From the IMG/VR virus record IMGVR_UViG_3300018962_000001, positions 124,001-188,000 of that record: 64,000 nt of DNA; one strand, given 5' to 3'. The notes under the pieces are model-generated. The model was not told the DNA's origin and did no database searches. It saw nothing but the letters and a program-made list of their open reading frames with translations. Positions 17,163-33,530 of the stretch are shown piece after piece. Made by a program: the position numbers and the translations under genes. Within the stretch, counting starts at the first letter, position 1; every line of letters starts with the position of its first letter.

Positions 17163-20100
17163 CTATCCTTTCAAGATATACCACCGATGTAAGCAGGCCG
17201 TCCCTTCACTGACCGCCAGCATTGCCAGCGGCACCTCGCTCAGAGTCACCGGCCACGGAATCGTTCCGACACTCACCATCCGTTTGCGATTCTGCCAGAT
17301 TTCGAGTCGTGCCCCCCCAGGCCGCGCCGCCAGCACGACGAGATAGCGGCCTGCCACACGACCGTCGACACTGCCCGCGACTCGTGCTGTCTGGCCGGTT
17401 GGATCAGCGGGGTCCACCCCCCATAGGAGAAAGCCCTGCGTTCGCCATTCTAACCAGATCCCGGCGCTGCCAAATCGTCGGTCGCGGGAGCTTGGGAGGG
17501 ACAATCCGATTTTGCCGGTTGCCGCCCCGCGCACGGCCTGAATCGTTAGATCGGCGACCAACGTGGGCTGGAATCGTGTCCCCGCTGCGCGTTCCCGAAT
17601 CGACGTACTTGCGAGGTGCGAGCCGTTCCCCGTCAAGACGATTCCAACATCCGGCTCATGGTCCACAACCCCCTGGATCGTATACAGCGGAGCAGGCAGA
17701 TCGCTATAGGCGAACGCCCCCGTGGCTGATCGCCAAAAGACATCGGCCAGGGCTACGTCATGGCGGACGCGCCAGGTCGTTTGATACTGATCGGTTCCGC
17801 GCGCATAGTGTCCCCGAACGCTGTGTGCGCGCAGCTCCGGCGTTTCGACCGCCACGCGCGTCCCATCCAGTAAAATCATGGGAAGAACGCCTGGGAGGGC
17901 CAGGAGACGCGGAAGGACTGCCGCCGTCGCCGCATCCGGCGGATAGGGTTCAACGGTCAGCGTTGTCAGATGGACGGCGCTCCGTTGGGCCACCGTTCGG
18001 CCACTCGTGGTTTCGGTAGCCTGAACCATGCCGCCACCAAAGCCGCGCTCAATCGTCCCTGCGCGGGTGTATAACGCCACCCCGCCCAGGAACAGCATAT
18101 TCCTGGGCACCTCCGACTCTGCCGGAAGGGTGGCTCCCGGTACCGGCGGCGACCACGGCGAGGGGCCACTTGGCCCCACGGTACGAATCTGGTACCAGTA
18201 CACACTTCCGCGTGGGAGGGGAACGTGATCCCACTGATAGGTGCGCTGCGTCGGATCGATCGGCAGCTGCGCGACGGGAGTCCACGTCAGCGCAGCTAAG
18301 GCATACGCGATTTCAAACCGCTGGGCAGTCGGGCTTGCCTGGGGATCGAAGGTCCAGTGGACTCGAATCCGATCAGCAAAGCCGCTCTCCGTCCGTACCG
18401 ACTCCGGCGGCGGCGGCAGGACCGGCAAGGAGCCACTGACAAAGGACGACCACGGAGACACGCGCATGCCACTGACGGCGCGAACCGCATACGTCACAAC
18501 GGTTCCGGGAGGCACCTGCGGATGCACCAACATCGGATGCGTCGCAGGCACGGATGGGAAACGGTACCACTGGCGGCGGTCAATGGTCCAGATCAGCTCA
18601 TTACTTTCTACCAGCGGCGTTGGATTGGTCCACTGGACCACGAGATCCGGTGCTTGCGGAATTACCACTAGATCAACGGGAGCTGCGAGCGACACTTCTT
18701 CGTGCCGGACGAGCGCGGCATGCTGGGTGGGGCGTCGCCCCGCTGCTCCGAGCAACATCGGCACCATGCGCAGGAGGACATGGTTTCCAGGGCGTCGTGG
18801 AATCACCGCCCCACCCTGGGCCAGAGTATGCAGGAAATCAAGTCCGGCGACAGCGGGGTGGCGATTCCACCCCGGACTTCCGCCCAATGGATGCCGCAGA
18901 CCACTGATCGTTGCCGCCGCTCCTGCCATTCGCACGGGCATGGCTCCCCCAAGCGGATGGTGGCGATCGAAGGCGGCGGTGGGTGCGCGGGGTGCGGCTG
19001 GGACCGATCCGCGTAGACTCACCTGGACCTGAAGCAGTGCGGCCCCGCCCTTCGCGGCTGCATGCTGGTGCCCCTGGATCGCGTGGCCGACTCGCACGGA
19101 GGCCGCCCCGGTAGGCCGGTGGCCGAAACTCGTCCCTTGGAGTGACGCGGCGGGAATCGCGGGCGTGCTACTCAGGAGCGCCACGGGCCGGACACGGCGG
19201 GCCGCCGCTGCCGCCCATAAGGTCGTCACTCCCCCACCCCAGGTAAGGCCACCCTGGATCGGGACGATCGCGGTCCCGTCCCGGCGACCCACGGTGCGCC
19301 GCAGGAGCCGCCCCTGGAGTCCCATACTGGCAGGAACCATACGGCGCAGGAGGGTACGGCGCAGGAGGGTTGTTCCCGGTGCTCCTGGGAGTGTAGGAAG
19401 GGCTACCGTGCGCCACTTCTGGCGATGAACGGCCAGGGCTGCTAGAATCGAGTGTGTGCCCGTGCGTTGGAGCACCACGCGCCGGAGCACACTTCCCTCC
19501 ACGCCCACCGTTGCTGCCACACCGCGCGCACGCCCCGTTCGCCACCCCACGGTGATGAGCAGCGCCGCCCCGGCCTGCTGGAACCGAGCACGGCCCACAC
19601 GGTATCCCAGGCTGGTCGTATTCGGGGTGGTCGCCGCAACAGCCCGCGGGACCGCCACACGGATCGTCAGATCCGTGGCGGCGCGACTCCGGCTCAAACT
19701 CGCCCCGGTAATGGCATGGGTCGTCATGAGGGCATTCACGTTATCGTAGGCGAGGGTATTCGGGGCACTTAGCGCTCCACCCGTACTGACATACGAATCG
19801 AATCGCACTCTGGTCGTGGCAAGCTGGCCCGCCGTGTAGAATCCTTGCCAGGCCAGATTCCATCCTGGCGGGTTCGTCCAGGTCGTGCCATCCGGCGAGA
19901 ACTCAGCATAGATCGTCCCGCCGGTTTCCCGAATTCGTGCCCAGCGATTAGCATTCAAGTCAAGCGGTGCGGAGGCAATCGTGGTATCCACGCCTGCCAC
20001 ACGCCGCTCAAAACTTAATGTCGCCCCAATGATTCGGATCTGAATCCAATGGCTTGAGTCAAAGCGGAGCGTGATTTGGTTGCGTTGCCGACTATCCAGC

Positions 20101-23100
20101 GTGCCGAAGTCCGTAAATTGCCAGTGCAACCCGGATTCGGTGAGATCATAGGTCCCAGCACTCTGAAGCACCGGGAAAATGCCCGGCGCACTGGTATCAA
20201 ACGCGATCTGGAGCACTTCCTGCTGGGTAATGGTCGCCCCCATCGCTGCCGTCATCGCCCAGCGGGTGGAATCGATCGTCGTCCCGGTAAAGCGATCGAC
20301 CAGATCACTCAATCGCCGAGATTCGAGTCGTCCTCCAAGACTAAAGGCCGTTTCCGACGCCTGGAGGTGCCCACTCACGCCAAAGCTCAGATCCTGAAGT
20401 GCCCGCAGCTGGCCGCTCACCAGAAATGACGCATCCAGTTGTTGCAGGAGCGCGGCCTTGATTTCGACCGCATGGAGCACCCAGTAGGTTGCGGCAGCAA
20501 AGGTGCCATCCAGAGTCACCTGCCCTGGCACCGGAACATCCGCGTACTCAATCGACACACTGGAGTTTGCGGATGCCGAGCTGGCTCCGGCGCGATGATT
20601 CAGGCGCAGGGGACTTTCGCCCTCACCCACGGCGAAGGTCGCATCCCGTGTCCCAACAATGGCAAGCGCACGCGCCTGGGCCGAGGTCGTCGATAACGCC
20701 ACACTTGGCGTGGTTTCTTGGGCCGTATCCTTCGTCGTCACGGGAACGCCGAATGCGCCACTCCCGCCGCTTCCCGTCGTGGCCGCATTGGTAAGCGGGA
20801 CTGCGAGAATAACCGCCGAGTCGGACACCGCACTGAGGGTGGCAGTGGTTGGCCCGGTGGTTGGCGCAGCGCCAATACCACGAAACACGGCGAGCTGCGA
20901 TCGTCCGCCACCATCAAAATCGTGAGTGATCCGAGTCCAGGTGATTCCATTCCCGGCCACCGAGTCGATCGTGAGGGGGACTTGCCGCCGCGCAACCACG
21001 GCGACCAGAATGGGCGTATTCGACGGCGGGGACCAGGTGCTCGTGGCGACCGTTTGCGCGGCAAGCGCTGATCCCACCACCTCGGTGCCGAATCCCAGCG
21101 GCGCAATCTGTGGCGGAGCTTGCAGCTTTGCTCCCACGCTGAAGCTGCACTCTCGTTCCTCAACGGTCATGATCGCAGGTTGAATCACCAGAACCGAGGC
21201 CGCCGCCGCCGCCGCATACGTGAACCCCGATGTTTTCACGCCACTGGGGGAAAGAGCACTGAGGTGTTGTGATGCGGTGGCGAAGCTGATTTGGACGCCG
21301 GAGGTTTTTCCCTGTGCCTGGATCGTCATCTCGCCTGGTGGGGTGATCGTATTCAGCGCGCCAATGGAGGAAACAAAAAGCAATAAGAGTCCATCGGCGA
21401 CATCTGGTTGGAGTGACGGAGCAAGGATCTGGGATTCGGTCGACAGATTGGTTGAGCCATCGATCACATTGACCAGGCTGGAACGGTCCACATTGTTGAG
21501 GGTATAGATCGTTCCCCCACTCGGGACCGCTTCTTCAAGGGTAAAGGTAAACGGCTGCGCTCCACCCGCCGGGGCGTAGCGTCCAAACACCGCGTCGGCG
21601 ACCGAATAGTCTTTGTTGGTTCGGATCAGGAGACTCCACCCTTCGGGCGGCGTAATCTCCACGCGCGGTAACGTCCCTGTATTACGAATGGCAACATGCG
21701 CAATCAGCGCCTGATCCGCGAGGGTCTGTGCCACGCTCGTGAGCGTGATCGTCCCCGCAGCGGCTTGGGGTGGCGTGACGCCCACCCCGACAATCGAGAT
21801 CGGCTTCGATTGCACACGCTGTCCAACGTGCAGCATGCCGCCAAGCGGAACCAGGAGCGAATGTTCGCCCGTGGTCGTGCCTGCTGCAATTTTGCCCCCT
21901 ACCGTAAAGGACCGATCCACAACCGTGATCCCGGCACTCGCTGCTAAGACCGAGATCGATCCCAGGAGATAGGAATCATCGGCTTGTTTTCCGTTCTGAG
22001 CGAGCCGGAGATTCGGGGCTTTGCCCGCCTGATCCACGATGACCACATGCAGGTTATACGATCCAGCGGGAACCGTGAGCGGTATATTGATGGTATCAAG
22101 GACGGTCACCGGCGCTTCGCCGGTGGGCAGCAGTTTCGTGAGATCGAGACTCGATGCGGGACTTTGCCACGTGACCGTTCCCGTCGAGGGATGGCGGAAT
22201 TGGTAATAGATTAGCCAGCGGAGAAAGCTGCGGCTCACGCCCAGGTTCTTCCACTCGCTGGTGATCGTCGTTTGTTGCCCTGCACGAATCGTGGTCCCTC
22301 GGATGCCAGTCATCGCATAGCGATACCCCGACGTGGACATACAGAGGATAAAGTTCTGCTGTTCTTCAAGCGTTAAGTTGCTATATGCCTGTGAGATGTT
22401 GCCATTCATCACCGAATCGACGCCGTAATAGCGGATGTGATCGAGGGTCAGGGCATAGTTCTCGCTGCCTCGGTACCATTCCCCGGTAAACGGCGCATCA
22501 TAGATCTGGGTCCGCAGCAGTGCCCATAGGGTACGACTCGCCCCCATTTTGCGGCGGAGGTCAAAATGCTCGATCTTGCCGAGGCTTTCGCGTCGCGCGC
22601 CGACCCAGGGATAGGTCGATCGGGCATATTCGTAGGAATAGGTGTCATCGGTCATGATGTACACAAACGTGTTTGGAAACATCGCCACCAGTTGATCGAT
22701 GACATATTGCTTGGTCGCGTTCGTTGCAAAATACGGGGCGTTGCCCGGAAGATACCCCTCCCCAAATTGTCCATACCAGAACAGATCGATCGCCTCGAAG
22801 TTCACATTCTTATCGTAGCGAGTCGCAATCGCTTGAAAGCAAGCGAGCAACCGTTCCAAGAAGTAGGCATGATTCCAGTTCGGACACCACAGGTCGCCGA
22901 GCCACGCGCCATACGGGGAAACCGTGAGGTAGCCGGGCACTTTTGATCCGGTATAACCGCCCCCACCCATCGGGTTTAACCCAAACTGGAAACGTCGCCC
23001 TTTCTGGGTTGCCCACCCGACCCAGGTATCCAGCGAGGACCAGTCATACACGCCCTGGCTGGTTTCAAAGTCATTCCAGAACCGCCGTCGATACGAGACG

Positions 23101-23870
23101 CGCCCCGGCATCGCAACGACCTGCGAACTAAACCATTCAACCGAGCCACGCATGGGATTGGGAATCTCATTGGCGGCAACCGTGGAATACGGGATCAGGG
23201 TGGGAGTAAACTGAAATGCGGGGGACGGCGGAACCGTGCCGGGCGCGAGCCGCAGGACAACCATTTGCCCGATATTGGTCGCCGCCGCCGCCGCCGAGGC
23301 GGTTAAGGAGGCAATCGTGCTGGCATTCAGGATCGTGCGATCGGCGACGGAGACGGTCAGGCTTAGGTTGGCGGCACGTGCTTGGGGAGTCCAGGTAGTC
23401 GGATCGGTGATCGTGGTTCCCGCAGCGGTCGCCGTAAAGACGAGGACATGGACATCCGCCACCTGGGGGAGCGTAACCCCAGGAATCGCGATCCCCGTGC
23501 TGGTACTGGTAAAGACGCCGGTGGAGTCGAGGACGGGAGCGGTCGGATCGAGTCCACCCAGACAGGCAATGGCACCCGCAGCTTGGTACTTGGTGTCAAA
23601 GGTTGCAAGATGATAGCGTGGCTCAGTCGCCGTCACCTTACGGATATACAGCGCCGAGGCGATCGTCGATCCCGACTGCGTACGTCGGATGGGCGTCCAG
23701 TTGGGCAGCGTGATCGTCACCGTGGCACTGGTGACCGCGATCTGCGCGATCAGCCATTCGCCGGGCACGGCATTATACGGAGTCACGAGGAGGAGAAAGT
23801 CGGCGAGCGCCGCTCCCCCACTCGTCGTTCCGTTGTGATCGGCGAGAATGCCGCGCCGGACAATTGGCAT
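17163..23870 (-). CDS. Giant (2235 aa) tail appendage protein: beta-sandwich repeats, glycoside-hydrolase-like (GH42-like/DUF4832) domain, LamG-like domain, periodic spacer, FN3 pair, Dit-like C-terminal region
   Basis: PNPMRG...WNDFETSQGVYDWS...WYGQFGEG...GYRY...WKNLG TIM-barrel + DUF4832 pattern; WARIRETGGTIYAEFSPDGTTW; YAVRAV and YQIRTV FN3 motifs. Confidence 0.8.
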   Translation of the reverse strand: MPIVRRGILADHNGTTSGGAALADFLLLVTPYNAVPGEWLIAQIAVTSATVTITLPNWTPIRRTQSGSTIASALYIRKVTATEPRYHLATFDTKYQAAGAIACLGGLDPTAPVLDSTGVFTSTSTGIAIPGVTLPQVADVHVLVFTATAAGTTITDPTTWTPQARAANLSLTVSVADRTILNASTIASLTASAAAAATNIGQMVVLRLAPGTVPPSPAFQFTPTLIPYSTVAANEIPNPMRGSVEWFSSQVVAMPGRVSYRRRFWNDFETSQGVYDWSSLDTWVGWATQKGRRFQFGLNPMGGGGYTGSKVPGYLTVSPYGAWLGDLWCPNWNHAYFLERLLACFQAIATRYDKNVNFEAIDLFWYGQFGEGYLPGNAPYFATNATKQYVIDQLVAMFPNTFVYIMTDDTYSYEYARSTYPWVGARRESLGKIEHFDLRRKMGASRTLWALLRTQIYDAPFTGEWYRGSENYALTLDHIRYYGVDSVMNGNISQAYSNLTLEEQQNFILCMSTSGYRYAMTGIRGTTIRAGQQTTITSEWKNLGVSRSFLRWLIYYQFRHPSTGTVTWQSPASSLDLTKLLPTGEAPVTVLDTINIPLTVPAGSYNLHVVIVDQAGKAPNLRLAQNGKQADDSYLLGSISVLAASAGITVVDRSFTVGGKIAAGTTTGEHSLLVPLGGMLHVGQRVQSKPISIVGVGVTPPQAAAGTITLTSVAQTLADQALIAHVAIRNTGTLPRVEITPPEGWSLLIRTNKDYSVADAVFGRYAPAGGAQPFTFTLEEAVPSGGTIYTLNNVDRSSLVNVIDGSTNLSTESQILAPSLQPDVADGLLLLFVSSIGALNTITPPGEMTIQAQGKTSGVQISFATASQHLSALSPSGVKTSGFTYAAAAAASVLVIQPAIMTVEERECSFSVGAKLQAPPQIAPLGFGTEVVGSALAAQTVATSTWSPPSNTPILVAVVARRQVPLTIDSVAGNGITWTRITHDFDGGGRSQLAVFRGIGAAPTTGPTTATLSAVSDSAVILAVPLTNAATTGSGGSGAFGVPVTTKDTAQETTPSVALSTTSAQARALAIVGTRDATFAVGEGESPLRLNHRAGASSASANSSVSIEYADVPVPGQVTLDGTFAAATYWVLHAVEIKAALLQQLDASFLVSGQLRALQDLSFGVSGHLQASETAFSLGGRLESRRLSDLVDRFTGTTIDSTRWAMTAAMGATITQQEVLQIAFDTSAPGIFPVLQSAGTYDLTESGLHWQFTDFGTLDSRQRNQITLRFDSSHWIQIRIIGATLSFERRVAGVDTTIASAPLDLNANRWARIRETGGTIYAEFSPDGTTWTNPPGWNLAWQGFYTAGQLATTRVRFDSYVSTGGALSAPNTLAYDNVNALMTTHAITGASLSRSRAATDLTIRVAVPRAVAATTPNTTSLGYRVGRARFQQAGAALLITVGWRTGRARGVAATVGVEGSVLRRVVLQRTGTHSILAALAVHRQKWRTVALPTLPGAPGTTLLRRTLLRRMVPASMGLQGRLLRRTVGRRDGTAIVPIQGGLTWGGGVTTLWAAAAARRVRPVALLSSTPAIPAASLQGTSFGHRPTGAASVRVGHAIQGHQHAAAKGGAALLQVQVSLRGSVPAAPRAPTAAFDRHHPLGGAMPVRMAGAAATISGLRHPLGGSPGWNRHPAVAGLDFLHTLAQGGAVIPRRPGNHVLLRMVPMLLGAAGRRPTQHAALVRHEEVSLAAPVDLVVIPQAPDLVVQWTNPTPLVESNELIWTIDRRQWYRFPSVPATHPMLVHPQVPPGTVVTYAVRAVSGMRVSPWSSFVSGSLPVLPPPPESVRTESGFADRIRVHWTFDPQASPTAQRFEIAYALAALTWTPVAQLPIDPTQRTYQWDHVPLPRGSVYWYQIRTVGPSGPSPWSPPVPGATLPAESEVPRNMLFLGGVALYTRAGTIERGFGGGMVQATETTSGRTVAQRSAVHLTTLTVEPYPPDAATAAVLPRLLALPGVLPMILLDGTRVAVETPELRAHSVRGHYARGTDQYQTTWRVRHDVALADVFWRSATGAFAYSDLPAPLYTIQGVVDHEPDVGIVLTGNGSHLASTSIRERAAGTRFQPTLVADLTIQAVRGAATGKIGLSLPSSRDRRFGSAGIWLEWRTQGFLLWGVDPADPTGQTARVAGSVDGRVAGRYLVVLAARPGGARLEIWQNRKRMVSVGTIPWPVTLSEVPLAMLAVSEGTACLHRWYILKG

Positions 23871-23872
23871 GC

Positions 23873-24271
23873 CTATGCTTCTCCGGTCGTCAGTTTCAGA
23901 TCACCGTTCGGATAGATGTACAGACGCACCGCGCGGACGCTGGTGATCTCAAGCTTGTCCGCAACGAGGCTCTGGGTCACCGTTCCCTGCATCACCTGGA
24001 GACTTTTCTCAACCACCCATGTTTTCGCCCAGCGTTCGTCAGCCGCCACCTCCAGGATGATCCGGCGGTGCGTTAAGTAGATGGGGGTGAGCACGATACG
24101 TCGCAGGGCCGACTCGCGCACCACGTCGATCGATTGTTCAACCCATCGATCGTGCTCCCAGCGATATTGGGAAATCGTGGTCCCATCCACCAGATCCGCG
24201 TTCCAGATGTACCCCCCGCGGAGATTCTCGACGCCCACCTGAGCCACCAGATCGACAACCGATAGATCCAT
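23873..24271 (-). CDS. Hypothetical protein co-encoded with putative fibre subunits (possible assembly factor)
   Basis: AAGGAGG RBS; YIWNADLVDGTTISQY; tight operon spacing. Confidence 0.7.
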   Translation of the reverse strand: MDLSVVDLVAQVGVENLRGGYIWNADLVDGTTISQYRWEHDRWVEQSIDVVRESALRRIVLTPIYLTHRRIILEVAADERWAKTWVVEKSLQVMQGTVTQSLVADKLEITSVRAVRLYIYPNGDLKLTTGEA

Positions 24272-24280
24272 CCAGCCTCC

Positions 24281-24787
24281 TTAGGTTTCGTCATACCGAT
24301 ACGTCAGCGTATAGTTTGGAAGCACCCCGGCGGCGGCGGCGGCGGTCACGCCCATTTGCGCATGCACATAATCTTGTGTGCCAACGCCGGTGCTGGCACT
24401 CAGCACCGTCCCCGCATTCACCACAAGGGGACTGGCGGCGGTATAGGAGGCCGCACTGACTCCATTGGAAATCCGCGTGGTTTCTTCCGCCGCATTGGGC
24501 TGGCTATAGGTCGAAGTTGTGCGGAGATACAAGGTTACGCCGGTTGCCCAAGCCCCTGATCCAAACAGCCGCAGATTGCTAATGCTGCCACTTGGCGCGG
24601 TGGTCGCTTCCATCTTAAAATACTTCGACCAGGAAAAGACCTCCCCCTGTCCCGGTATCTGCACGGGAACCGTTGCGACATCGGTGGTCGGATCACTATC
24701 ACCTTTATGAAACCGCCCACCAGCAGCCAGCGCGGTCCCTGCCGCCACCGCACCGTGATAGGAAAGTGCCCGCGTGGTTGCTGGCAT
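24281..24787 (-). CDS. Small beta-sandwich virion structural protein (putative fibre subunit, ends YRYDET)
   Basis: AAGGAGG RBS; all-beta Ala/Thr/Gly-rich; PVQIP...SWSKY...ISNLRLF...DYVHAQM...LTYRYDET. Confidence 0.7.
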   Translation of the reverse strand: MPATTRALSYHGAVAAGTALAAGGRFHKGDSDPTTDVATVPVQIPGQGEVFSWSKYFKMEATTAPSGSISNLRLFGSGAWATGVTLYLRTTSTYSQPNAAEETTRISNGVSAASYTAASPLVVNAGTVLSASTGVGTQDYVHAQMGVTAAAAAGVLPNYTLTYRYDET

Positions 24788-24798
24788 GGAGAGCCTCC

Positions 24799-25428
24799 TT
24801 AGCCTTCATAGAGCGCCAGTGCGCCGGGGGCAATCGACGGCGCACTATCGCCCGCGTTGATCGTGCGTGGCAAGCCCAGCAGCACGCCTGCGGAGTCCGT
24901 GTGCCCGGTTGCTCCAGCACCGCGCGTCACGGTCCACACGGTGGTTCCTTGCCCGGCGGTCACCGTCAGTTGCTCATCGTCGATCGTGATGGTATAGCTC
25001 CCGGAGGTGGGAAAGCCACTCGCAGACGCGACGGTGATCGTCGTCGCCACGGCAGTGATTGCGCCGACCAACAAGGTGTACGCGCCGACCGGACCACCTT
25101 CCCAATAATTGCCCCCCACCGCCGCATCCCAGATTCCAAAGAAGGCCACCGTTCCCCAGTTCGCGCCGGTCGGCACCGGAAACGTAATGGCATTCACATT
25201 CGTAATGCGCTGCACCTCATTCCCCACGGCAACGGGCGCAAACCACGAGGCATCGCCAACCGGCACCGCCACGCGGGCATAGCCTCCTCCGGACACCTCA
25301 TTCGCGCCGGTATCTCCTGGATCGCCGGTATGGAGGGATACATACACGGTGGTTGGTTTTGCCAGGGTGGCCGATCGGTAGCGATGATTCAGGAGGGCTG
25401 CCTCCAAGTAGTTCGACTTTCCAGCCAT
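24799..25428 (-). CDS. Phage minor tail/fibre subunit (SNYLE...VSLHTGDPG...EVSGGGYAR family) with inserted small beta domain
   Basis: Family motifs SNYLEAALLNH, LHTGDPG, EVSGGGYARV, ITFP, WGTV.FFGIWDA..GGN, RTINAGD. Confidence 0.85.
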   Translation of the reverse strand: MAGKSNYLEAALLNHRYRSATLAKPTTVYVSLHTGDPGDTGANEVSGGGYARVAVPVGDASWFAPVAVGNEVQRITNVNAITFPVPTGANWGTVAFFGIWDAAVGGNYWEGGPVGAYTLLVGAITAVATTITVASASGFPTSGSYTITIDDEQLTVTAGQGTTVWTVTRGAGATGHTDSAGVLLGLPRTINAGDSAPSIAPGALALYEG

Positions 25429-25754: not shown

Positions 25755-28700
25755 TTAAATATATCCAGCGGCACGCAGATCGCGCAAAAAGCCTGCCCAG
25801 GCTTCTTCTTGCCGGGCATCAATCATCCGGGCAATTTGATCAAGGGTATAATTGACGCCCTCAATCTGGTAGGTCGGAGCATAGGTGATGGGCGGCAGGT
25901 TCAGCCGGGTCGCCACGGCAGCCAGCGCGGGCGCTGCTGTTTGTGCCCGGAATCGGTCAAAGGTCGCAGCGCCGCCACCAAGCGAACGGTCGAGCAATCC
26001 ATGCTCCAGCTCCTGTGTCAATGCGACTAATTGATCCTCCATCGCCGCCCGCAATCGCGCGAGTCGTTCGCGTAACCGATCGACGGGAACGACGACCTCC
26101 GGCCCAGCCTCGCCCAATAAGTAATTGGTACCAGTATGCGCCCCGATCCCGGTCACCGGCTCCCGAATGACGCCACCTGTGGCATACCCAACCCAGCCAC
26201 CACCACGCATCACCGACTGGACCCCAGGCAGATCACGAATATGGCCGTACCGGCGTTTAATATAATTAATCGCGGCGATCAGGTTTTCAATGGGATCATA
26301 GATGTCTCCGGGATTGCCAAGATCCCGTCCGTTCGCATAGCCCAGATCTCCGGTATAGGCACGGGCGGATGCCCGTTTGTTGGCATTAAAGGTTTGCGGA
26401 ATCGTTTGAGCCAGGCCGCGCGATGGATACCCCGCGCGAAAATTCGAGTCCCATAGATTGATAGATCGGGGATTCCAGCCTGACTCATACTTGCCAAGAA
26501 TGGACAGCCCCTGAAGCCAATCGCGGGTAACCGCAGCCCCTGCCAGTGCCTCGCTGATCCACGATCGCGCTGGCCCCGGTGTGCCCGGCCAGTACTCGCC
26601 ACCCCGTGGGTCCGGCGTGTCTTGAGTCACGCCCCGCAGTTCGCGGAGGAAGGCCGCGAGTTCCAGCTTGGGATCAACCCAATTGCCCCGTTTGTCACTA
26701 ATCTGATAGTGGAGGTGATCGACCATTTCCCCGTCGCGGTAGGGCGTATGCCCGACGTTGCCGATGTCATAGCCCCGCTCGATCTGCTGGCCCGCGCGGA
26801 AGTTGGCTGGATCAACGAGGTGGGCATAGTAGTGTTCGCGACCCGATTGCCCGCGAATTTGAATATAGTTTCCACCGAATCCGTTCCAGCCCTGATAGGA
26901 AACGACGCCGCTCTCCAGTGCTCGGATGATCGTCCCTTCATCGGCGAGAATGTCGATGCCCTCGTGTCTCCCGGTGGTATCAGGACGCGCATCCCCCCAC
27001 CACGATACGATCTCCCGGCTGCCGACCATAAACTCGGCAGCGTCATAGACATCGGTCCCGACCTGGGCATCCTCAAAGGCACGCAGTAAGCCTTCGACCA
27101 GCGCGAGTGCCCACTCTTTCACTTTGCCGAAGATCGCCGTGCCCACACCAGCAAAGGCATCACCAGCAAAGTCGAACGACTCGAATCCCACGGCGCTCAG
27201 CCCACGATCCAGCACCCACCCCGCACCTTGACTGATCCAGTTAATGACATCGCCGATCGCGTCGCCAATGCCAAGTTCATAGGCCGGGTAGTTCCCCGGT
27301 AGCAACCCACGCCGCCGCAGGCGCGCGGTCTCCTGATGCGGGAGGACCGTTGAGCCGCGCGGCAACATAACGATTTCCGGTCCCTTTTCTCCCACAATGG
27401 CCGGGCCACCTGGATGGTACCCCCGCCGCGTGCCCCGCGCATATTGGGGAATGGTCGGAAGATTAAAGGTATCGGGAAGCGGCGCGGCAGCACCGAGCTT
27501 CTCGGCAATCCAATTGATCGCGTCGCGGAATTTGTTGACAAAGAACTCAAACCCTTTAATGGCAGCATTAAGTCCCGACGATCCATCCGCCGGGCCGATG
27601 GCCGTGTTTGCCATCTTTTTCATAATGGTGCCGATCTCGTTAGCAGCTCCCACGAACGGGGCGAGAATGGCCTCCTTGATCTCGCTGATTCGGTCGCTCA
27701 TCCCTTTCCAGGCGCGATAGCCTCCATTGAGCACGCCATTGCCCCGGTCATCCCAGGTGCCGACAAAATCACGCATCGCGGTTTTGCCACCCTCGACGAG
27801 ATTCGCAAAGAGTCCCAGCACGCCAGGGCCACCAACGGTGTACGTTCCCACCAAATTGTTCCGAATAAGATTCGGAAGATTAACGACCAGTTGTGCCACC
27901 TGGCCGATTAAGGAGTCGCCGCTGGTATCACTCAGCCCAATCCACTGCTTCACGGTGCGACTGGTATCGTTGATTAACCCCCAGAATAGCCCAAGGACGC
28001 CGCCGCCGCCGGACGCATAGCGCCCGACCAACTCGCCGATGAGTCGGAAGAATCCATTCGCGAGGCGTTGGATCGTGCCTAACATCGATCCGGCAGCAGA
28101 ATCCGATCCGACCCAGGCAATCAGCGCATCGAGGCCTTCATTGACAAGCCAATACAGCCAGCCCAGTACCCCGTTCTGCCCGGACGCATACGTGCCAACC
28201 ATCCATCTGATCGCAGCGAGATAGTCATCCGCAAGCGTGCGGATCAGACCGAGCATCCCCCCCTGTTGGTAGGCTCCGATCCATCGCTCAATATTTGTTA
28301 GCGCGGTATCCACCAGCGTTGCCAGGAGTCCAAGCAGACCGCCGCCGCCGGGAGTCCACGTGCCGACCATCCAACGGATGGTCTGAAGCATGGCATCCGC
28401 GAGACCCTGGATTTTCGCAAGCCCCCAGTCCCATAAGTTCTGGAACCACCGCACGATCCCGTTGACCATATCGGGAATAATCGAGTGCCCAACCAGATCC
28501 ACCCACAGCTGGTAAAAGGCGTTTTTCACCCCTTCCCACAAGCCAACTGCCAGGCCGATCACCGTGGTCACTGCCCCGGTGAAGATCGATACTACACTGT
28601 CAATAATCCCCTGGACAAAATCGCCAACCGCTTGCCAAAGCGGCTGCCAATCGCCGGTATAGAATCCGTAGATGATTCCCGCAACAATCCGCACCACCCC

Positions 28701-31700
28701 GGTGATCACCGTCGCGATTAGTTGAATCACGCCAAGGAAGACCTCAATGATTCCGCCAAGCCCGACGATCACGCCCGGCAGCACCCCGGACAGCAGATTG
28801 ATGATGAATCCCAGGACATAGAGAAACGTCGTTCCCAGAATCGTGCCCACCGTCACCAATACCGCAGCGATACCTCCTAAGATGGGCATGAGCGACCGCA
28901 GGGTATTGAAAAAGATGGTGACCAGAGGACTCAGCACCTGGAACGCGGTTTGGAGATTCGCCCAGAGGCGTCCGAACGCTAACCCAACCGCTCCCACGGC
29001 ACGTTGAAAATCATGAAAGAGCGGTTGCAGGAAGGCGATGAATCGACTCCAGGTCGGCGTGACCGTGGTGTTCCAGTACTGAACAAACTCGGCGACGCGC
29101 CCCTGAATATTGCCCCAGTTCTTCAGCCACGCCACCGTTAACAGCCCGATCACCAGCGCGATCGCGCCAATCGCGAGGGTGACGGGGTTGATCGCGACCG
29201 CTAAGGCTGAGAAGATGGCTGGCCCGGTGCGGAATAGCCCCAGGAGGTTGCTGACAGGATTGGTCAGCATGGTGAGCGGGTTCAATGCCCGCCAGATTGC
29301 GCTGAACACCGGTCCCAGCCGTGATCCCACGGCTGCCAGGACCGGGAAGCGCGTGCCGAGGGCCGTAAATAGGCCCGTAACCGTGTTGACAGGGTGGATT
29401 AACAGTTGGAATGGATTCAGGATTCCGCGCAGCGCAGGGGCTAGGGGACCAAGGTAGGTTGTCACCCCTTGGATTCCAAGATGAATCGCACCGCCAACGC
29501 GGAAGACGGCAAAGGCCGTCCCAATCCCCGCGACGACACTGAGAATCGTCCCGCCATTGGTTTGCAAGAAGGCAAAGAAGGGCTGGATTTCGGCCCGCAC
29601 CCCTTGCATCGTCGCCCGCAGATTGGCAAACTCATCGGGGAGTTGACCGAGTCCGCCGAACTCGGATTCCCAATCCACCCGTGCTTCGCCCCCCGCAGGC
29701 ATCGGAGGCAGCGGGATGTCGGGAGCCGTCATGCCAAAGAGGGCAGTGACAAATTGGACAACCGCATTGCGGGCTAAGTCGATTCGCTCCTTAGCCGTAT
29801 CAATCGTGGTGCTGAATGATTGCCATGCTTGTTGGCCTTGGGCCAGGCCAGTCGTGATATTGTCGGTGAGCTGCGTGATCGCCTGGGTCGCGTCACCAAA
29901 GGTCGATTGTTGTCCACGAGCCGCTTGATCGGCTGCTTTTTGCGCCTTTTCCTGAATGTTCAGGATCATCTGCTCAATTTCTGAGTACTCTTGTGATCCC
30001 TCGGCATAGCGACTGCGAAGGCCCATCAACAGCTCAAGGGCTTCGTTATATCGTCCTTGATCCGTCAGGAGGCGCGCTTGGGCCTTGATCTGCCGCTCAT
30101 AGGCGTTTTCTGCCTTGATCCCCGAACTTGCGATCGAACGATCCCGCTGGGCTTGCAGACGCTCAATCTGCGCCTCGATGTTGAGCCACTCTTTCGATCC
30201 CTCGGCAAAGTGCGACTGTCGCTCCCGCAGCTTCGCAATCGCTCCATCATAATCGCCGGTTGCCTTTTCCAGATTGGCTTGCGCGGCGATCTGTTGATCC
30301 ATCGCCTTCGCAGCCTTGCCGGTTGCCTCCTCCTGCAACCGTGCCCGGCGTTCTTCGAGCACCTGGATCTGGCGCAGCGTGTCAAAGTACTCCTTGCTCC
30401 CCGGCTCCAAGCCCGCCAACTTTTCGCGCAAGATGGCGATCTGCCCGTTGGTGTCCTCCAGTTCCAGGTTGTATTTTTCCTGGGCGGTTCCCACCTTGGC
30501 AGCATCGCGGGCGGCGTCCTCCGCTTGCTGGCGTTGGAGATTGGCGATCTGCTCCATGATGCGGTAGCGCTCTGCCGGATCAGTGGTTCGTTCAAGCTCC
30601 TCGTTAAGCAACGCGATTTTGCCGGGCGTATCCGCAATGGCGAGCTGGTAGTCGAGGAGGGCTTTTCGCTGCCGTTCCTGTTCTTCCGTCGCTTCACGCC
30701 GGGCTTGATTGAGTTCTCGCTCCGCTTCCAGATATTCCAGTGTGCCGGGGGTCAATTCACTTAAGCGTTGCTCTAGGATCGCGGTCTTTTCCGCCGCCGT
30801 CGCCGTTTCGAGGGCATTGCGGCGCTGCGCCTCGGCCAAGGCTTCCGCTTCTTTGCGCGACTTTTCTTCAGCCGCCGCCTGAAGCTGCGCCAACTGGGTC
30901 CGCAGCCGGTATCCTTCTTCAGACTCTTCGCCAACCGCCGCGATCCGGTCGCGCAACATTTGCTGGCGTGTTGCATCATCGGCAATCGCGTATTGATAAT
31001 CCCACTGTGCGTCCGCTAAGCGCTTGAGCCGATCTTCTTCCTTTTTGGTCCCACTTTCGCGTTCATCGGCCAGGCGATGCTCCAGGTCATAGATCTGCGC
31101 GAGAATCTTGTAGTATTCTTCACTTCCATGCTCAACATTCGCAAGTTCACCGCGCAGGATCGCCAGTTTCCCGGCAGTATCGGCAATATGGAAGTTGTAG
31201 TCGCGCTGGGCTTTCGCGCGGCGGTTGGCTTCCAAGACCGCCTCGCGTTCCCCCGGCGTCATGCCCGGCAGCAGCCCAAGTTTGCGATCTTCATTGATCT
31301 GGCGTTGAATTTGCAGCACCTGCTCCATGAAGCGGAGTTCCCGCTCTTGGAGGCGGTCGGCGGCGGCAAATCCGGCCAAACGGTCGGCGACCACCTGCTG
31401 CTGCTGTTTCAAAATCTCAAGCTGCTGCTGGAGTTGGGTCTTTTGATCGTCTTGGGCCTGTTCCTGGGCCTCCAACATCGCCAGCTGATCGCGCGCGGCA
31501 CGTTGTTGCGTAAAGGTGCGTGCGTTGCGCAGGGCACGTTCTGCCGAGCGTGTTGCTTCTTGGAGACGGCGGCGGGCGGCGGGATCATCCAAGGCCCGCA
31601 GCTTCGCTTGCACCTCATCGATCTGTTGGGTAAGAACGGCCTGATTCAACCGCTCTTGAATACGTAGGAAGATGTCGCGGTTTTGTTCGCCGAGGCGCGA

Positions 31701-33398
31701 CTCGATCTGCATCAATGATTCGGCACTGATCCTCCCCGTTTGATTGATGGAGTCGATCGCCTGCGCGACCAGTTGCGTGATCCCCGGATCTCCATTGGTG
31801 CCCACGGAGATGCGAATCGCTTCCTCAGCACTAATTTTGCCCGCCGTAACCAGCGCCGTCAGCCGATCTTGAACCTCCTCGGCGATCGTCGTCAGTGCGC
31901 CAAAGTCCGAATCGTCCCACTCAAGATAGGCCCGGAGGACCGGACTAAACCACGTGTCAATGGTCGAGAGCGGCCCTTCTCGCGGCGGCGAGAAACCACG
32001 CAAGAACGCTTCGATCCGGCTAGTGATTGCCAGGATTGCCATCTCGACGTAGCTACTGGCTCCTGCTAACATGCCATCGGCGAAGGCTGCAATGCTGTTC
32101 ACACCGCCAAGGAACAGTTCACGCGACAGGTTCTGAATCAGGCGAAGAATGAGTCCACTTAATCCCAGCAGGAGATTCGTAATCTGGGTGGCAGCCGTGC
32201 CGAAATCGCCGCTAAACAGGGAGATCAAGGCTCCCCGGAGCGGCGCGAGCGCGGCCAGCACCTGCGCTGCAAACTGGCCGTATCCTCCCACGACCCGATC
32301 CACAAAGGCCAGCGCTGGGGCGGTTGCCTGGCTGAATCCGGTTGCCATTGCCTGAACCGTGCTGATAGCGAGGCGCATGCCTGCGGCAATGCCCTGCCCC
32401 AGCGTGGCGGCGGCGGCGAATAACGCCGGGTCTTTCAGTAAATTTTCGAGGCCAACCAACTGCTCTTTGATGACATCAAAGATTGGTGCTCCGAACACGC
32501 TGCGCAGCATGAACCAGCGGTCAGAAATATTCGACAGAATACCGTCCATCGATCGGGCGGCAAGTTGGGCGGCACCGCCGAACTTCTCGGCAAGAATCTC
32601 GTTGAGGGCGGTGAGCGCCTGATCCGCCGTGCCGAGATACGTTCCCTGCGCATCGAACTTGAGTCCCTTCATCTCAAGATCGGAGCGAGTCGCAATCGCA
32701 AGCTCTCGGAGGCGGCGGAAGGCATCGCCGAAGTCACCCGTTCCAACACGAGCAATCGCGAAGGTGACTTGTTCCAATTGGCTGCTTAAATCACGGATCG
32801 CCGGACGAGTGACGACCGCTGCGTTGGCGACGTTGAGGAGAAATTCTTGCGTGCGCGCGCCAGCAACCTGGAGTTGCCGATCCGCTTCCACCAGCGCGGG
32901 CAGATCAAACGGGGTTTGCACATTAATCGCCTGCAATTCGGCAAGGCGACTTCGGGCGCGCGCGAGCATCTGCGCTGTCGTATCGCCTTCCTGTCGCAGC
33001 AGGGTCATGTAGGAGATGATGCTGTTTTCGAGTTGCTGGTTGGGACCAACCAGCCCGGAGAGTGCTGCCGAGGCAATCCGGCCTAACTCACGGAATCCAA
33101 AGGTCAACGCGCCCACGCGCGTGATCAGGCCGACCATCCCCCCGCCTAAGACGTTGATCGACGATGACAATCCTGACGAGGTTTGCTGGGCACGGACGAA
33201 CGTGTCGCGAAGCACGGAAGCCAGGGTTCGGGCTGACGCGGTAAGTGAACTCATGGATCGCGTGCTCGTCTGCGTGTTGACGTTAAACCCCTGGAGCTGT
33301 GATCCAAGCGCTTGAAGATTTGACCCGATGGCGCGGAGGGCGTTCAGCGCCGACTGGGCATTGCCCGTAAAATTTAAGAGAACCTGAATTTGATTCAC
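25755..33398 (-). CDS. Tape measure protein with C-terminal M23 peptidase and lytic transglycosylase domains
   Basis: GGAGG RBS + GTG 33398; TPFDLPAL..A..QL and GILSNISD TMP motifs; long amphipathic repeats; HEGID/YAHL/HLH (M23); ESGWNP..IN.WDSN, GLAQ, DPIENL.AA..YI..RYG (SLT). Confidence 0.95.
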   Translation of the reverse strand: MNQIQVLLNFTGNAQSALNALRAIGSNLQALGSQLQGFNVNTQTSTRSMSSLTASARTLASVLRDTFVRAQQTSSGLSSSINVLGGGMVGLITRVGALTFGFRELGRIASAALSGLVGPNQQLENSIISYMTLLRQEGDTTAQMLARARSRLAELQAINVQTPFDLPALVEADRQLQVAGARTQEFLLNVANAAVVTRPAIRDLSSQLEQVTFAIARVGTGDFGDAFRRLRELAIATRSDLEMKGLKFDAQGTYLGTADQALTALNEILAEKFGGAAQLAARSMDGILSNISDRWFMLRSVFGAPIFDVIKEQLVGLENLLKDPALFAAAATLGQGIAAGMRLAISTVQAMATGFSQATAPALAFVDRVVGGYGQFAAQVLAALAPLRGALISLFSGDFGTAATQITNLLLGLSGLILRLIQNLSRELFLGGVNSIAAFADGMLAGASSYVEMAILAITSRIEAFLRGFSPPREGPLSTIDTWFSPVLRAYLEWDDSDFGALTTIAEEVQDRLTALVTAGKISAEEAIRISVGTNGDPGITQLVAQAIDSINQTGRISAESLMQIESRLGEQNRDIFLRIQERLNQAVLTQQIDEVQAKLRALDDPAARRRLQEATRSAERALRNARTFTQQRAARDQLAMLEAQEQAQDDQKTQLQQQLEILKQQQQVVADRLAGFAAADRLQERELRFMEQVLQIQRQINEDRKLGLLPGMTPGEREAVLEANRRAKAQRDYNFHIADTAGKLAILRGELANVEHGSEEYYKILAQIYDLEHRLADERESGTKKEEDRLKRLADAQWDYQYAIADDATRQQMLRDRIAAVGEESEEGYRLRTQLAQLQAAAEEKSRKEAEALAEAQRRNALETATAAEKTAILEQRLSELTPGTLEYLEAERELNQARREATEEQERQRKALLDYQLAIADTPGKIALLNEELERTTDPAERYRIMEQIANLQRQQAEDAARDAAKVGTAQEKYNLELEDTNGQIAILREKLAGLEPGSKEYFDTLRQIQVLEERRARLQEEATGKAAKAMDQQIAAQANLEKATGDYDGAIAKLRERQSHFAEGSKEWLNIEAQIERLQAQRDRSIASSGIKAENAYERQIKAQARLLTDQGRYNEALELLMGLRSRYAEGSQEYSEIEQMILNIQEKAQKAADQAARGQQSTFGDATQAITQLTDNITTGLAQGQQAWQSFSTTIDTAKERIDLARNAVVQFVTALFGMTAPDIPLPPMPAGGEARVDWESEFGGLGQLPDEFANLRATMQGVRAEIQPFFAFLQTNGGTILSVVAGIGTAFAVFRVGGAIHLGIQGVTTYLGPLAPALRGILNPFQLLIHPVNTVTGLFTALGTRFPVLAAVGSRLGPVFSAIWRALNPLTMLTNPVSNLLGLFRTGPAIFSALAVAINPVTLAIGAIALVIGLLTVAWLKNWGNIQGRVAEFVQYWNTTVTPTWSRFIAFLQPLFHDFQRAVGAVGLAFGRLWANLQTAFQVLSPLVTIFFNTLRSLMPILGGIAAVLVTVGTILGTTFLYVLGFIINLLSGVLPGVIVGLGGIIEVFLGVIQLIATVITGVVRIVAGIIYGFYTGDWQPLWQAVGDFVQGIIDSVVSIFTGAVTTVIGLAVGLWEGVKNAFYQLWVDLVGHSIIPDMVNGIVRWFQNLWDWGLAKIQGLADAMLQTIRWMVGTWTPGGGGLLGLLATLVDTALTNIERWIGAYQQGGMLGLIRTLADDYLAAIRWMVGTYASGQNGVLGWLYWLVNEGLDALIAWVGSDSAAGSMLGTIQRLANGFFRLIGELVGRYASGGGGVLGLFWGLINDTSRTVKQWIGLSDTSGDSLIGQVAQLVVNLPNLIRNNLVGTYTVGGPGVLGLFANLVEGGKTAMRDFVGTWDDRGNGVLNGGYRAWKGMSDRISEIKEAILAPFVGAANEIGTIMKKMANTAIGPADGSSGLNAAIKGFEFFVNKFRDAINWIAEKLGAAAPLPDTFNLPTIPQYARGTRRGYHPGGPAIVGEKGPEIVMLPRGSTVLPHQETARLRRRGLLPGNYPAYELGIGDAIGDVINWISQGAGWVLDRGLSAVGFESFDFAGDAFAGVGTAIFGKVKEWALALVEGLLRAFEDAQVGTDVYDAAEFMVGSREIVSWWGDARPDTTGRHEGIDILADEGTIIRALESGVVSYQGWNGFGGNYIQIRGQSGREHYYAHLVDPANFRAGQQIERGYDIGNVGHTPYRDGEMVDHLHYQISDKRGNWVDPKLELAAFLRELRGVTQDTPDPRGGEYWPGTPGPARSWISEALAGAAVTRDWLQGLSILGKYESGWNPRSINLWDSNFRAGYPSRGLAQTIPQTFNANKRASARAYTGDLGYANGRDLGNPGDIYDPIENLIAAINYIKRRYGHIRDLPGVQSVMRGGGWVGYATGGVIREPVTGIGAHTGTNYLLGEAGPEVVVPVDRLRERLARLRAAMEDQLVALTQELEHGLLDRSLGGGAATFDRFRAQTAAPALAAVATRLNLPPITYAPTYQIEGVNYTLDQIARMIDARQEEAWAGFLRDLRAAGYI

Positions 33399-33410
33399 GG
33401 TTGTCCCTCC

Positions 33411-33439
33411 TTGCCGAAGGGACGAACGTGATCTACAGT
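33411..33439 (+). promoter_or_regulatory. Sigma70-type promoter for orphan pentamer RNA
   Basis: TTGCCG-17-TACAGT, 11 nt upstream of the GGNNN tract. Confidence 0.55.
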
Positions 33440-33450
33440 GCGGTGAACGC

Positions 33451-33530
33451 GGCCTGGATCGGCCTGAGACGGCATCGACGGGCAAGGCACGGTTGGGCTA
33501 TCCGTGGCTAGGTATGGTTGGGCGTGGCGC
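33451..33530 (+). ncRNA. Orphan (GGY-NN)16 pentamer-tract RNA, candidate guide
   Basis: 16 in-register pentamers, 13 starting GG; flanked by promoter and terminator. Confidence 0.65.

What the first reader, a model, noticed from the sequence alone, without database searches (positions are those of the whole stretch)
18690..21925. Three different repeat codes in the 2235-aa protein, matching three small subunit genes
Seen: type A is about 8 Arg-started 20-aa units (about 19707-19225, e.g. RAVAATTPNTTSLGYRVGRA, RFQQAGAALLITVGWRTGRA), the same type as in the 1686-aa protein 26 kb away. Type B is 7 units of 21-23 aa starting (L/I)xG (about 19143-18690: LQGTSF.., IQGHQH.., LRGSVP.., LGGAMP.., LGGSPG..). 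Type C is six 13-14 aa units xDxSFxVGGxLxA between globular domains (about 21925-21826, 21158-21117, 20441-20320). The genome encodes three unrelated-looking or divergent small beta-sandwich proteins (50628..51272, 24799..25428, 24281..24787). Inference: each code recruits its own subunit, giving a segment-programmed heteropolymeric fibre. 23873..24271 could be a chaperone for one of them.
Basis: partly seen in the sequence, partly recalled or inferred. Interest (0 to 1): 0.78.

Follow-up and report, generated by a model that had tools for sequence, protein, structure and literature searches.

The report
Bead-on-rope phage fibre proteins
Two giant proteins of a 205-kb phage carry stretches of 20-21-residue repeats that look like the "rope" on which small bead proteins dock in the chain-like fibres recently solved in a few phages; here two repeat types sit on one protein and each travels with its own bead family, while the third proposed code-subunit pair does not hold up.

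Summary
- Type A: strict 20-aa Arg period, z 6.3.
- Type B: about 21 aa, weaker, z 2.8-3.6.
- Type C: the SFxVGGxL motif occurs 5 times against 0.01 expected.

The 209-aa protein belongs to the GP4 fibre I gp80 family (PF23140, E 3e-32). The 214-aa protein is probably a divergent gp80/whisker fold. The 168-aa protein is unrelated to both.

Gene neighbourhoods support two of the three proposed pairings.
- Type A with the 214 family: 9 of 9 further 214-family loci encode an Arg-type 20-aa array downstream, against 3 of 80 gp80 loci.
- Type B with gp80: the three closest gp80 relatives examined sit next to 21-aa HPLxG/NPLSG arrays. Cross-scoring is reciprocal: each repeat type fits only its own profile.
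- Type C with the 168-aa protein: not supported. The 168+132 gene pair occurs in about 14 other loci without type C arrays.

So the 2235-aa protein is most likely a rope for a two-bead chain-like fibre. This kind is already known from GP4, Bas63 and A1002, the last with two bead proteins on one rope. The single complex prediction gave no answer, so docking itself is not shown. I rate this a new variant of a known kind.

The parts
17163..23870 (-). P, a 2235-aa multidomain protein and proposed rope of a two-bead chain-like fibre. It is encoded after the tape measure gene and four small genes.
19227..19706 (-). Type A array: 7-8 Arg-type 20-aa units (aa 1389-1548). Proposed docking sites for dimers of the 214-aa bead.
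   Evidence: Lag-20 Arg periodicity, z 6.3. It fits the unit profile of 214-linked arrays (z 3.6-3.7) but not the gp80-linked profile (z -0.2).
18690..19148 (-). Type B array: about 7 units of 21-23 aa, HPLxG-type (aa 1575-1727). Proposed docking sites for dimers of the 209-aa gp80-like bead.
   Evidence: Lag 21, z 2.8-3.6. It fits the profile of the L033 HPLxG array (z 3.0, 0 of 300 shuffles reach it) but not the type A profile (z -1.0).
21810..21920 (-). Type C pair (aa 651-687) at a domain boundary. The ortholog in L005 has the same pair at aa 672-710.
21114..21155 (-). Type C single unit (aa 906-919).
20304..20438 (-). Type C triple (aa 1145-1189). The homologous stretch of Q carries Arg-type 20-aa units instead.
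18135..18671 (-). fn3-like region (aa 1734-1912).
   Evidence: Weak match to the tail fibre chain 9l9p_S and to an fn3 domain.
17166..18110 (-). Conserved C-terminal domain of about 315 aa. It is the only part shared with the L005 ortholog and is the proposed virion anchor.
   Evidence: 35-38% identity to the L005 1474-aa protein, E 1e-43. No family was identified.
24799..25428 (-). 209-aa bead: gp80 fold (PF23140) with an inserted domain of about 75 aa.
   Evidence: Pfam E 2.9e-32. PDB 8jou_a E 7.5e-13. Alignment A3.
50628..51272 (-). 214-aa bead, a divergent gp80/whisker-like fold (aa 70-213).
   Evidence: AF2 model pLDDT 78. Best PDB matches are GP4 gp80 (Z 6.8) and the Bas63 and Sf14 whiskers (Z 5.9). 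hhalign E 0.009-0.014. Atlas neighbours carry PF23140.
45238..50298 (-). Q, a 1686-aa second rope protein. It has Arg-type 20-aa arrays at aa 441-530, 745-870 and 1160-1660, at least 35 units in all.
51269..51940 (-). 223-aa protein. Its family lies directly upstream of the 214-family gene in 10 of 10 loci. Role unknown.
   Evidence: jackhmmer
24281..24787 (-). 168-aa beta-sandwich protein of a large uncharacterised phage family. Not gp80-like. A link to type C is not supported.
23873..24271 (-). 132-aa protein, the conserved gene partner of the 168-aa family.
   Evidence: HMM hits beside the 168-family gene in about 14 of 18 distinct loci.

Best explanation
P (2235 aa) and Q (1686 aa) are rope proteins of chain-like, bead-on-a-string fibres of a siphophage-like jumbo phage. 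Tracts of 20-21-residue units stay extended, and each unit offers beta-strands that complete the sheets of a dimer of a small gp80-fold bead protein.

Arg-type 20-aa units (type A in P, all arrays in Q) take the 214-aa bead. HPLxG-type 21-aa units (type B in P) take the 209-aa gp80-like bead. P would therefore carry two consecutive blocks of different beads. These blocks lie between its conserved C-terminal anchor and fn3 domains on one side and its distal globular domains on the other.

Type C hairpin motifs are most likely short structural linkers between domains. They expand into a 17-unit stalk in the ortholog. They are probably not a third docking code.

Shown here: the repeats, the family membership of the 209-aa protein, and the gene neighbourhood rules. 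Inferred: docking itself, the number of beads per unit, and where the proteins sit in the virion.
For: - **The 209-aa protein is a gp80 family member.** PF23140 Gp80 at E 2.9e-32. It matches the solved GP4 fibre I chain 8jou_a at E 7.5e-13.
- **The 214-aa protein resembles gp80 and whisker proteins.** The model's top PDB matches are GP4 gp80 (Z 6.8 over 119 residues) and the Bas63 and Sf14 whiskers (Z 5.9). The profile comparison gives E 0.009 across three colinear motif blocks. The gp80 HMM hits it at E 0.0025 within the genome.
- **The literature establishes the mechanism.** gp80-fold dimers dock by sheet augmentation on a rope, and A1002 carries two bead proteins on one rope (PMC13730344; PMC12609058).
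- **Type A travels with the 214 family.** All 9 further 214-family loci (L009-L011, L035-L040) encode an Arg-type 20-aa array downstream, against 3 of 80 gp80 loci (Fisher p 3.5e-10).
- **gp80 genes travel with 19-23-aa arrays.** 48 of 80 gp80 loci have such an array, often within 25 nt of the gene. None of 19 168-family loci has one (p 5.6e-7).
- **The closest gp80 relatives of the 209-aa protein sit by arrays like type B.** L033 has 11 HPLxG units (z up to 14.5). L032 and L034 have similar HPL/NPLSG units.
- **Cross-scoring is reciprocal.** P type A fits only the 214-linked profile. P type B fits only the L033 profile.
- **The inventory is small.** Arrays and beads are single-copy, and arrays occur only in P and Q in the whole genome.
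Against: - No structural evidence of docking exists for these proteins. The complex prediction gave no answer.
- Type B periodicity is modest, and its profile match (z 3.0) rests on 11 units from one locus.
- The homology of the 214-aa protein to gp80 is remote: hhalign probability is under 5%, and Z 6.8 lies in the range that can reflect a common fold.
- The 214 gene lies 26 kb from P, next to Q. P's type A units might instead take the adjacent 209-aa bead, or none.
- The loci compared are not phylogenetically independent.
- GP4 gp79 being the rope is my inference from its repeats. It has no sequence match in the PDB.
- No Gp77 collar is present, so the attachment point is unknown.
Confidence: 0.6

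Rival explanations
1. All three codes are real docking codes. Type C hairpins act as donor-strand-like motifs that recruit the 168-aa subunit, with the 132-aa protein as its chaperone or adaptor. This would give a three-subunit programmed fibre.
For: - The 168 and 132 genes sit directly upstream of P. In the ortholog locus L005 they sit directly upstream of a protein with about 17 tandem type C units.
- Foldseek ranked chaperone-usher pilins first for the 168-aa model (FimG, probability 0.99-1.0, E 2.6e-3).
- Type C has alternating hydrophobic residues around Gly, as donor strands do.
Against: - The 168+132 pair occurs in about 14 other loci with no type C array. Type C arrays are confined to P and its single ortholog.
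- The 168-aa model is poor (pLDDT 57).
- The second-look aligner scores pilins no better than viral jelly rolls (Z 5.4 against 5.7).
- This pairing was not put through a complex prediction.
Confidence: 0.1
2. The repeat tracts are self-sufficient fibrous folds: a beta-solenoid with 20 residues per turn for types A and B, and a triple beta-spiral-like trimeric shaft for type C. The small proteins are unrelated virion parts.
For: - Strict 20-aa periodicity without insertions or deletions over more than 500 aa in Q is typical of solenoids.
- The type C pattern (xPLxIGGxLxx, 14 aa) resembles the roughly 15-residue shaft repeat of the adenovirus fibre. That comparison is from my own knowledge and was not tested.
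- In the ortholog, type C forms a long stalk in the position of types A and B.
Against: - Array type is tightly coupled to bead family in gene neighbourhoods. This would be unexplained for types A and B.
- Solved ropes have the same unit length of about 20-24 residues per dimer (PMC13730344).
- For type C this reading remains open, and it is part of my best explanation.
Confidence: 0.15
3. Types A and B are both generic gp80-family docking sites with no bead specificity. P carries only the adjacent 209-aa bead and Q only the adjacent 214-aa bead.
For: - Each rope gene has one bead gene just upstream.
- P's type A tract is homologous to Q's middle tract, but its units are more degenerate.
Against: - Arg-type arrays are almost absent from 80 canonical gp80 loci (3 of 80), and they are universal in 214-family loci.
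- Types A and B score reciprocally with different profiles.
Confidence: 0.15

Closest known systems
Ralstonia podophage GP4 fibre I: gp80 dimers on a rope protein (PDB 8JOU; Zheng et al., J Mol Biol 2023, cited in PMC13730344 and PMC12609058)
   Same: - The 209-aa protein is a sequence member of the gp80 family (39% identity).
- The bead gene lies next to a gene with tandem units of about 20-21 aa. GP4 gp79 has about 11 such units.
   Different: - In GP4 the rope is a separate small protein of about 325 aa, there is one bead type with five dimers, and the fibre anchors on a 15-fold Gp77 collar.
- Here the ropes are embedded in proteins of 1686-2235 aa.
- There is no Gp77 in the genome.
- There are two array types.
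- The phage is a jumbo siphophage-like virus.
Pseudomonas podophage A1002 chain-like fibre: nozzle-rope gp39 with gp40 and gp41 dimers (PMC13730344, 2026)
   Same: - One rope polypeptide is fused to a virion-anchoring domain.
- It has consecutive blocks of docking sites occupied by two different bead proteins of low mutual identity but the same fold.
   Different: - In A1002 both bead genes flank the rope gene and there are 11 sites.
- Here one bead gene lies 26 kb away beside a second rope protein, and about 15 units are predicted in P and at least 35 in Q.
- Occupancy is inferred here, not seen.
- No sequence similarity to A1002 proteins was detected.
Bas63 and Sf14 collar-whisker complex (PMC12609058; PDB 9MT4, 9C39)
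   Same: - Whisker monomers are the next-best structural matches of the 214-aa model (Z 5.9).
- The rope is a domain of a larger protein.
   Different: - Bas63 has only two whisker dimers per rope domain, attached to the neck of a myophage.
Anabaena myophage A-1(L) bead-chain neck fibre (PMC10966104)
   Same: - A beaded fibre built from many copies of a small protein.
   Different: - The beads are trimers joined head to tail, with no rope polypeptide and no gp80 fold reported.

Membership tests
Pfam PF23140 (GP4 fibre I protein gp80) | Sequence match above the curated cut-off of 27 bits | tested here: met
   The 209-aa protein scores 112 bits, E 2.9e-32. The genome search gives 113.5 bits. The 214-aa and 168-aa proteins have no Pfam hit.
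Chain-like fibre (rope plus gp80-fold dimers) | Bead subunit with the gp80/whisker fold | tested here: met
   Met for the 209-aa protein by sequence. For the 214-aa protein the evidence is only moderate: 8jou_a Z 6.8, whiskers Z 5.9, hhalign E 0.009.
Chain-like fibre (rope plus gp80-fold dimers) | Rope: an extended polypeptide with tandem docking units of about 20-24 residues | tested here: met
   Period 20 for type A and 21 for type B. Arrays of the same kind lie next to bead genes in other phages.
Chain-like fibre (rope plus gp80-fold dimers) | Bead dimers physically docked on the rope by beta-sheet augmentation | tested here: inconclusive
   Complex prediction returned no answer (score 0.00, controls not run).
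Chain-like fibre (rope plus gp80-fold dimers) | Bead and rope genes travel together | tested here: met
   9 of 9 further 214-family loci have Arg-type arrays. 48 of 80 gp80 loci have arrays of 19-23 aa. 0 of 19 control loci have any.
GP4-type fibre I specifically | Rope anchored on an Ig-like Gp77 fibre-tail adaptor (PF23148) | tested here: not met
   No PF23148 match in the 204,685-bp genome at E up to 10.
A1002-type two-protein chain-like fibre | Two blocks of sites on one rope, each occupied by a different bead protein | not testable with these tools
   Two array types lie in tandem (aa 1389-1548 and 1575-1727), and there are two bead families with matching neighbourhood preferences. Occupancy needs a structure or biochemistry.
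Donor-strand-complemented pilin-like subunit (for the 168-aa protein and type C) | Incomplete Ig fold, plus a donor-strand motif that co-occurs with the subunit | tested here: not met
   The fold match is not specific: pilins score Z 5.4 against 5.7 for jelly rolls, on a model with pLDDT 57. Type C arrays are absent from the other 168-family loci.
Triple beta-spiral shaft (for type C) | Repeat of about 15 residues with alternating hydrophobic residues and a Gly/Pro turn, in a homotrimer | not tested
   The pattern resemblance rests on memory only. No trimer prediction or structure was available.

The most novel reading that the evidence does not exclude
Phage fibre stalks may be written in a small set of orthogonal peptide-repeat codes, each read by its own co-evolving bead family. 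The candidates are Arg-type 20-mers, HPLxG 21-mers and possibly the 14-residue type C hairpin. Under this reading a single polypeptide would program the order and number of different beads, with type C recruiting the uncharacterised 168-aa subunit together with its 132-aa partner as a third, pilin-like system.
Probability: 0.1. Interest if true: 0.8.

Novelty: new variant of a known kind. Interest (0 to 1): 0.55.

Why it matters
Chain-like fibres have been seen in only a handful of solved phages, and always as a special case.

The comparison here suggests a general rule readable from sequence. A gp80-family gene is usually accompanied by a protein with a 20-21-residue array. A large undescribed sister family, the 214-aa type, has more than 140 clusters at 90% identity. 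In every locus examined it is preceded by a 223-aa-type gene and followed by an Arg-type array.

If docking is confirmed, several things follow:
- Bead number and fibre length could be predicted from the repeat count.
- Many "hypothetical" low-complexity giant phage proteins could be annotated.
- The array-bead pairs would offer modular parts for building fibres of defined length and composition.

Tried and rejected
- **Complex prediction.** I ran 214 x2 + 209 x2 + a type B peptide + a type A peptide as a 2x2 specificity test. It returned no answer and I do not use it.
- **BLAST self-comparison of P** found no internal repeats. A short-unit HMM could not find units in P or Q. Periodicity tests and in-phase profiles were needed instead.
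- **Direct sequence and profile comparison of the three small proteins.** Pairwise BLAST gave no significant matches. The 168 family shows nothing against gp80 or the 214 family, even with deep profiles.
- **Pilin-like reading of the 168-aa protein.** This was a Foldseek lead. It was not upheld by VIA-align, PHROGs or the PDB profile search.
- **Searches for relatives of P's C-terminal anchor** in viral contigs found none. Its fold and family remain unidentified.
- **GP4 gp79 against the PDB** gave no sequence match, so its role as the rope is inferred.
- **The cut upstream gene in L005** could not be shown to be the 102-aa homolog (E 0.72). Absence of a gp80 gene there is therefore only positional.
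- **Phage GenBank searches** with the major capsid protein and with the rope region found nothing.
- **The 132-aa protein.** Atlas features point weakly to F5/8 type C domains, at chance level.


Full report
**Setting.** The window is bases 124001-188000 of a 204,685-bp virus record that CheckV rates complete. On the minus strand it holds, in order:
- a major head protein (42079..43140, phrog_3990);
- a Neck1 / tail completion protein (39584..40339);
- a weak major tail protein match (38391..39056);
- a 2576-aa tape measure protein with M23 and SLT domains (25755..33485);
- four small genes of 102, 209, 168 and 132 aa;
- the 2235-aa protein P (17163..23870);
- a 1426-aa protein;
- a 1991-aa fibre with CBM, fn3 and an S74 chaperone domain.

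Upstream of the head genes lie a 223-aa gene, a 214-aa gene, a 103-aa gene and the 1686-aa protein Q (45238..50298). This is a siphophage-like jumbo phage. One 214-family homolog is named from Kouleothrix (Chloroflexota), which hints at the host clade.

**The observation.**
- Type A (aa 1389-1548) has Arg periodicity at lag 20 (z 6.3) and lag 40 (z 3.4).
- Q aa 1130-1686 shows the same period (z 7.8-8.5) with an almost invariant Arg every 20 residues and no insertions or deletions over about 25 units.
- P 987-1525 aligns with Q 310-867 (E 3e-23), so the two proteins share a globular domain, a linker, a second domain and the first array.
- Type B (aa 1575-1727) is weaker, with lag 21 at z 3.6 and 2.8.
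- The type C strict motif occurs five times against 0.0125 expected.
- Its period of 14 is unmistakable in the ortholog of locus L005, which has about 17 tandem units.

**The small proteins.**
- The 209-aa protein is PF23140, the GP4 fibre I protein gp80 (E 2.9e-32). It matches the solved chain 8jou_a. The alignment shows a complete gp80 fold with an inserted domain of about 75 aa.
- The 214-aa protein has no Pfam hit. Its AF2 model (pLDDT 78) has as best PDB matches GP4 gp80 (Foldseek rank 1; VIA Z 6.8, 119 of 136 residues) and the Bas63 and Sf14 whiskers (Z 5.9).
- Further support for the 214-aa protein is weaker. Profile comparison with gp80 gives E 0.009-0.014 over three colinear motifs. 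Its nearest named Atlas clusters carry PF23140. The gp80 HMM finds it at E 0.0025 in the genome. I regard it as a probable distant gp80/whisker relative.
- The 168-aa protein shows nothing against either family, even with deep profiles. Its model is poor (pLDDT 57).
- Foldseek placed chaperone-usher pilins first for the 168-aa model. The second-look aligner scores them no better than viral jelly rolls.

**What is known.** In GP4, five dimers of gp80 are strung on a rope protein. In Bas63, a rope domain of the collar protein carries two whisker dimers. In A1002, the rope part of a nozzle protein carries 11 dimers, with dimers 1-7 of gp40 and dimers 8-11 of gp41, each dimer completing a beta-sheet with the rope (PMC13730344; PMC12609058). 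GP4 gp79, encoded next to gp80, has about 11 Gly-rich units of 20-21 aa. I infer that it is the rope, although it has no sequence entry in the PDB.

**Comparative test of the codes.**
- *214 family.* All 9 further loci (L009-L011, L035-L040) encode, within a few kb downstream, a protein with long Arg-type 20-aa arrays of up to about 55 units, such as RALSSTIAQSATLARSAARA. A 223-aa-type gene lies directly upstream in 10 of 10 loci, counting the window.
- *gp80 family.* Of 80 viral loci, 48 have a same-strand ORF with a 19-23-aa array, often abutting the gp80 gene. Only 3 of these arrays are Arg-type.
- *168 family.* None of 19 loci has any such array (Fisher p 3.5e-10 and 5.6e-7, loci not independent).
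- *Closest gp80 relatives of the 209-aa protein.* L033 has a 284-aa protein made of 11 units of the form HPLxGxxxGxGxxxAxRVRLx. L032 and L034 have HPL/NPLSG units. P type B reads HPLGGAMPVRMAGAAATISGLR / HPLGGSPGWNRHPAVAGLDFL.
- *Profile cross-test.* P type A fits the 214-linked profile (z 3.7) and not the L033 profile (z -0.2). P type B fits the L033 profile (z 3.0) and not the type A profile (z -1.0).
- *168 and 132.* The two genes are a tight pair in about 14 of 18 loci. Type C arrays occur only in P and its ortholog.

Two of the three proposed pairings are therefore supported by neighbourhood. The third is not.

**Mechanism.** The best reading is that P is anchored through its conserved C-terminal 315 aa, the only part shared with the L005 ortholog. 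Moving outward from the anchor it would carry:
- two fn3-like domains;
- about 7 type B units bearing dimers of the 209-aa bead;
- about 7-8 type A units bearing dimers of the 214-aa bead;
- globular domains joined by type C hairpins.

Q would be a second and much longer rope for the 214-aa bead. A1002 has about 27 angstrom of rope per dimer. If one dimer sits on each unit, the beaded part would be roughly 40 nm in P and over 90 nm in Q. That estimate is inference. Type C most likely forms short beta-hairpin linkers. In the ortholog, a 17-unit type C stalk replaces the type A, type B and fn3 region.

**Limits.**
- The single complex prediction (both beads as dimers, plus type A and type B peptides) returned no answer and counts neither way.
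- The attachment site is unknown. There is no Gp77 collar, and the anchor domain matches no family.
- The homology of the 214-aa protein to gp80 is remote.
- Type B statistics are modest.

**Verdict.** The architecture has direct precedents, above all A1002, so this is a new variant of a known kind. The new elements are:
- the Arg-type array with its own bead family and 223-aa companion;
- ropes embedded in giant multidomain proteins of a jumbo siphophage-like virus;
- the sequence-level rule linking array class to bead clade.

Noticed in passing
window 24281..24787 and 23873..24271 (minus strand): The 168-aa protein belongs to a large uncharacterised phage family. The family has 757 representative clusters at E<=1e-3, uniform length of 165-190 aa, and no Pfam, PHROG or PDB match. 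It is almost always encoded beside a partner of 125-215 aa, the 132-aa family. The pair appears next to fibre, lysis or head genes in different phages.
   Followed up: partly
window 51269..51940 (minus strand): The 223-aa protein family lies directly upstream of the 214-family gene in 10 of 10 loci, forming a conserved module with the Arg-type rope. Its role (assembly factor or adaptor) is unknown.
   Followed up: partly
window 24799..25428, aa ~108-186 of the 209-aa protein: The gp80 fold is interrupted by an inserted domain of about 75 aa that matches phrog_12150 and phrog_4406. Relatives lack it. Locus L032 instead has a tandemly duplicated gp80 of 277 aa.
   Followed up: partly
window 48709..48978 (Q aa 441-530): There are four more Arg-started 20-aa units at the position where the homologous stretch of P has the three type C units. 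The two repeat kinds appear to be interchangeable as inter-domain modules.
   Followed up: no
L005:1195-5619: The ortholog of P shares only the C-terminal 310 aa or so. It carries a GH5 cellulase domain, a Laminin_G_3 domain and about 17 tandem 14-aa type C units. This shows wholesale swapping of the distal modules on a constant anchor.
   Followed up: partly
window 25755..33485 (minus strand): The tape measure protein is 2576 aa and has M23 peptidase and SLT domains near its C-terminus, which implies a very long tail.
   Followed up: no
L041-L120 (viral contigs with gp80 genes): The arrays beside gp80 genes come in several distinct unit flavours, for example AIQLVGAVGITLAPAGSLTT, ALASDLSASGTVTADLTLPAD and GSITGSTTVSSDSFRIRTAT. 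All have a period of 20-21. This suggests many co-evolving rope and bead lineages.
   Followed up: partly
L010:20020-20373: A 117-aa protein with a weak Gp77 match (the GP4 fibre-tail adaptor) follows the 1661-aa Arg-type rope protein in that locus. The window's genome has no Gp77 match.
   Followed up: partly
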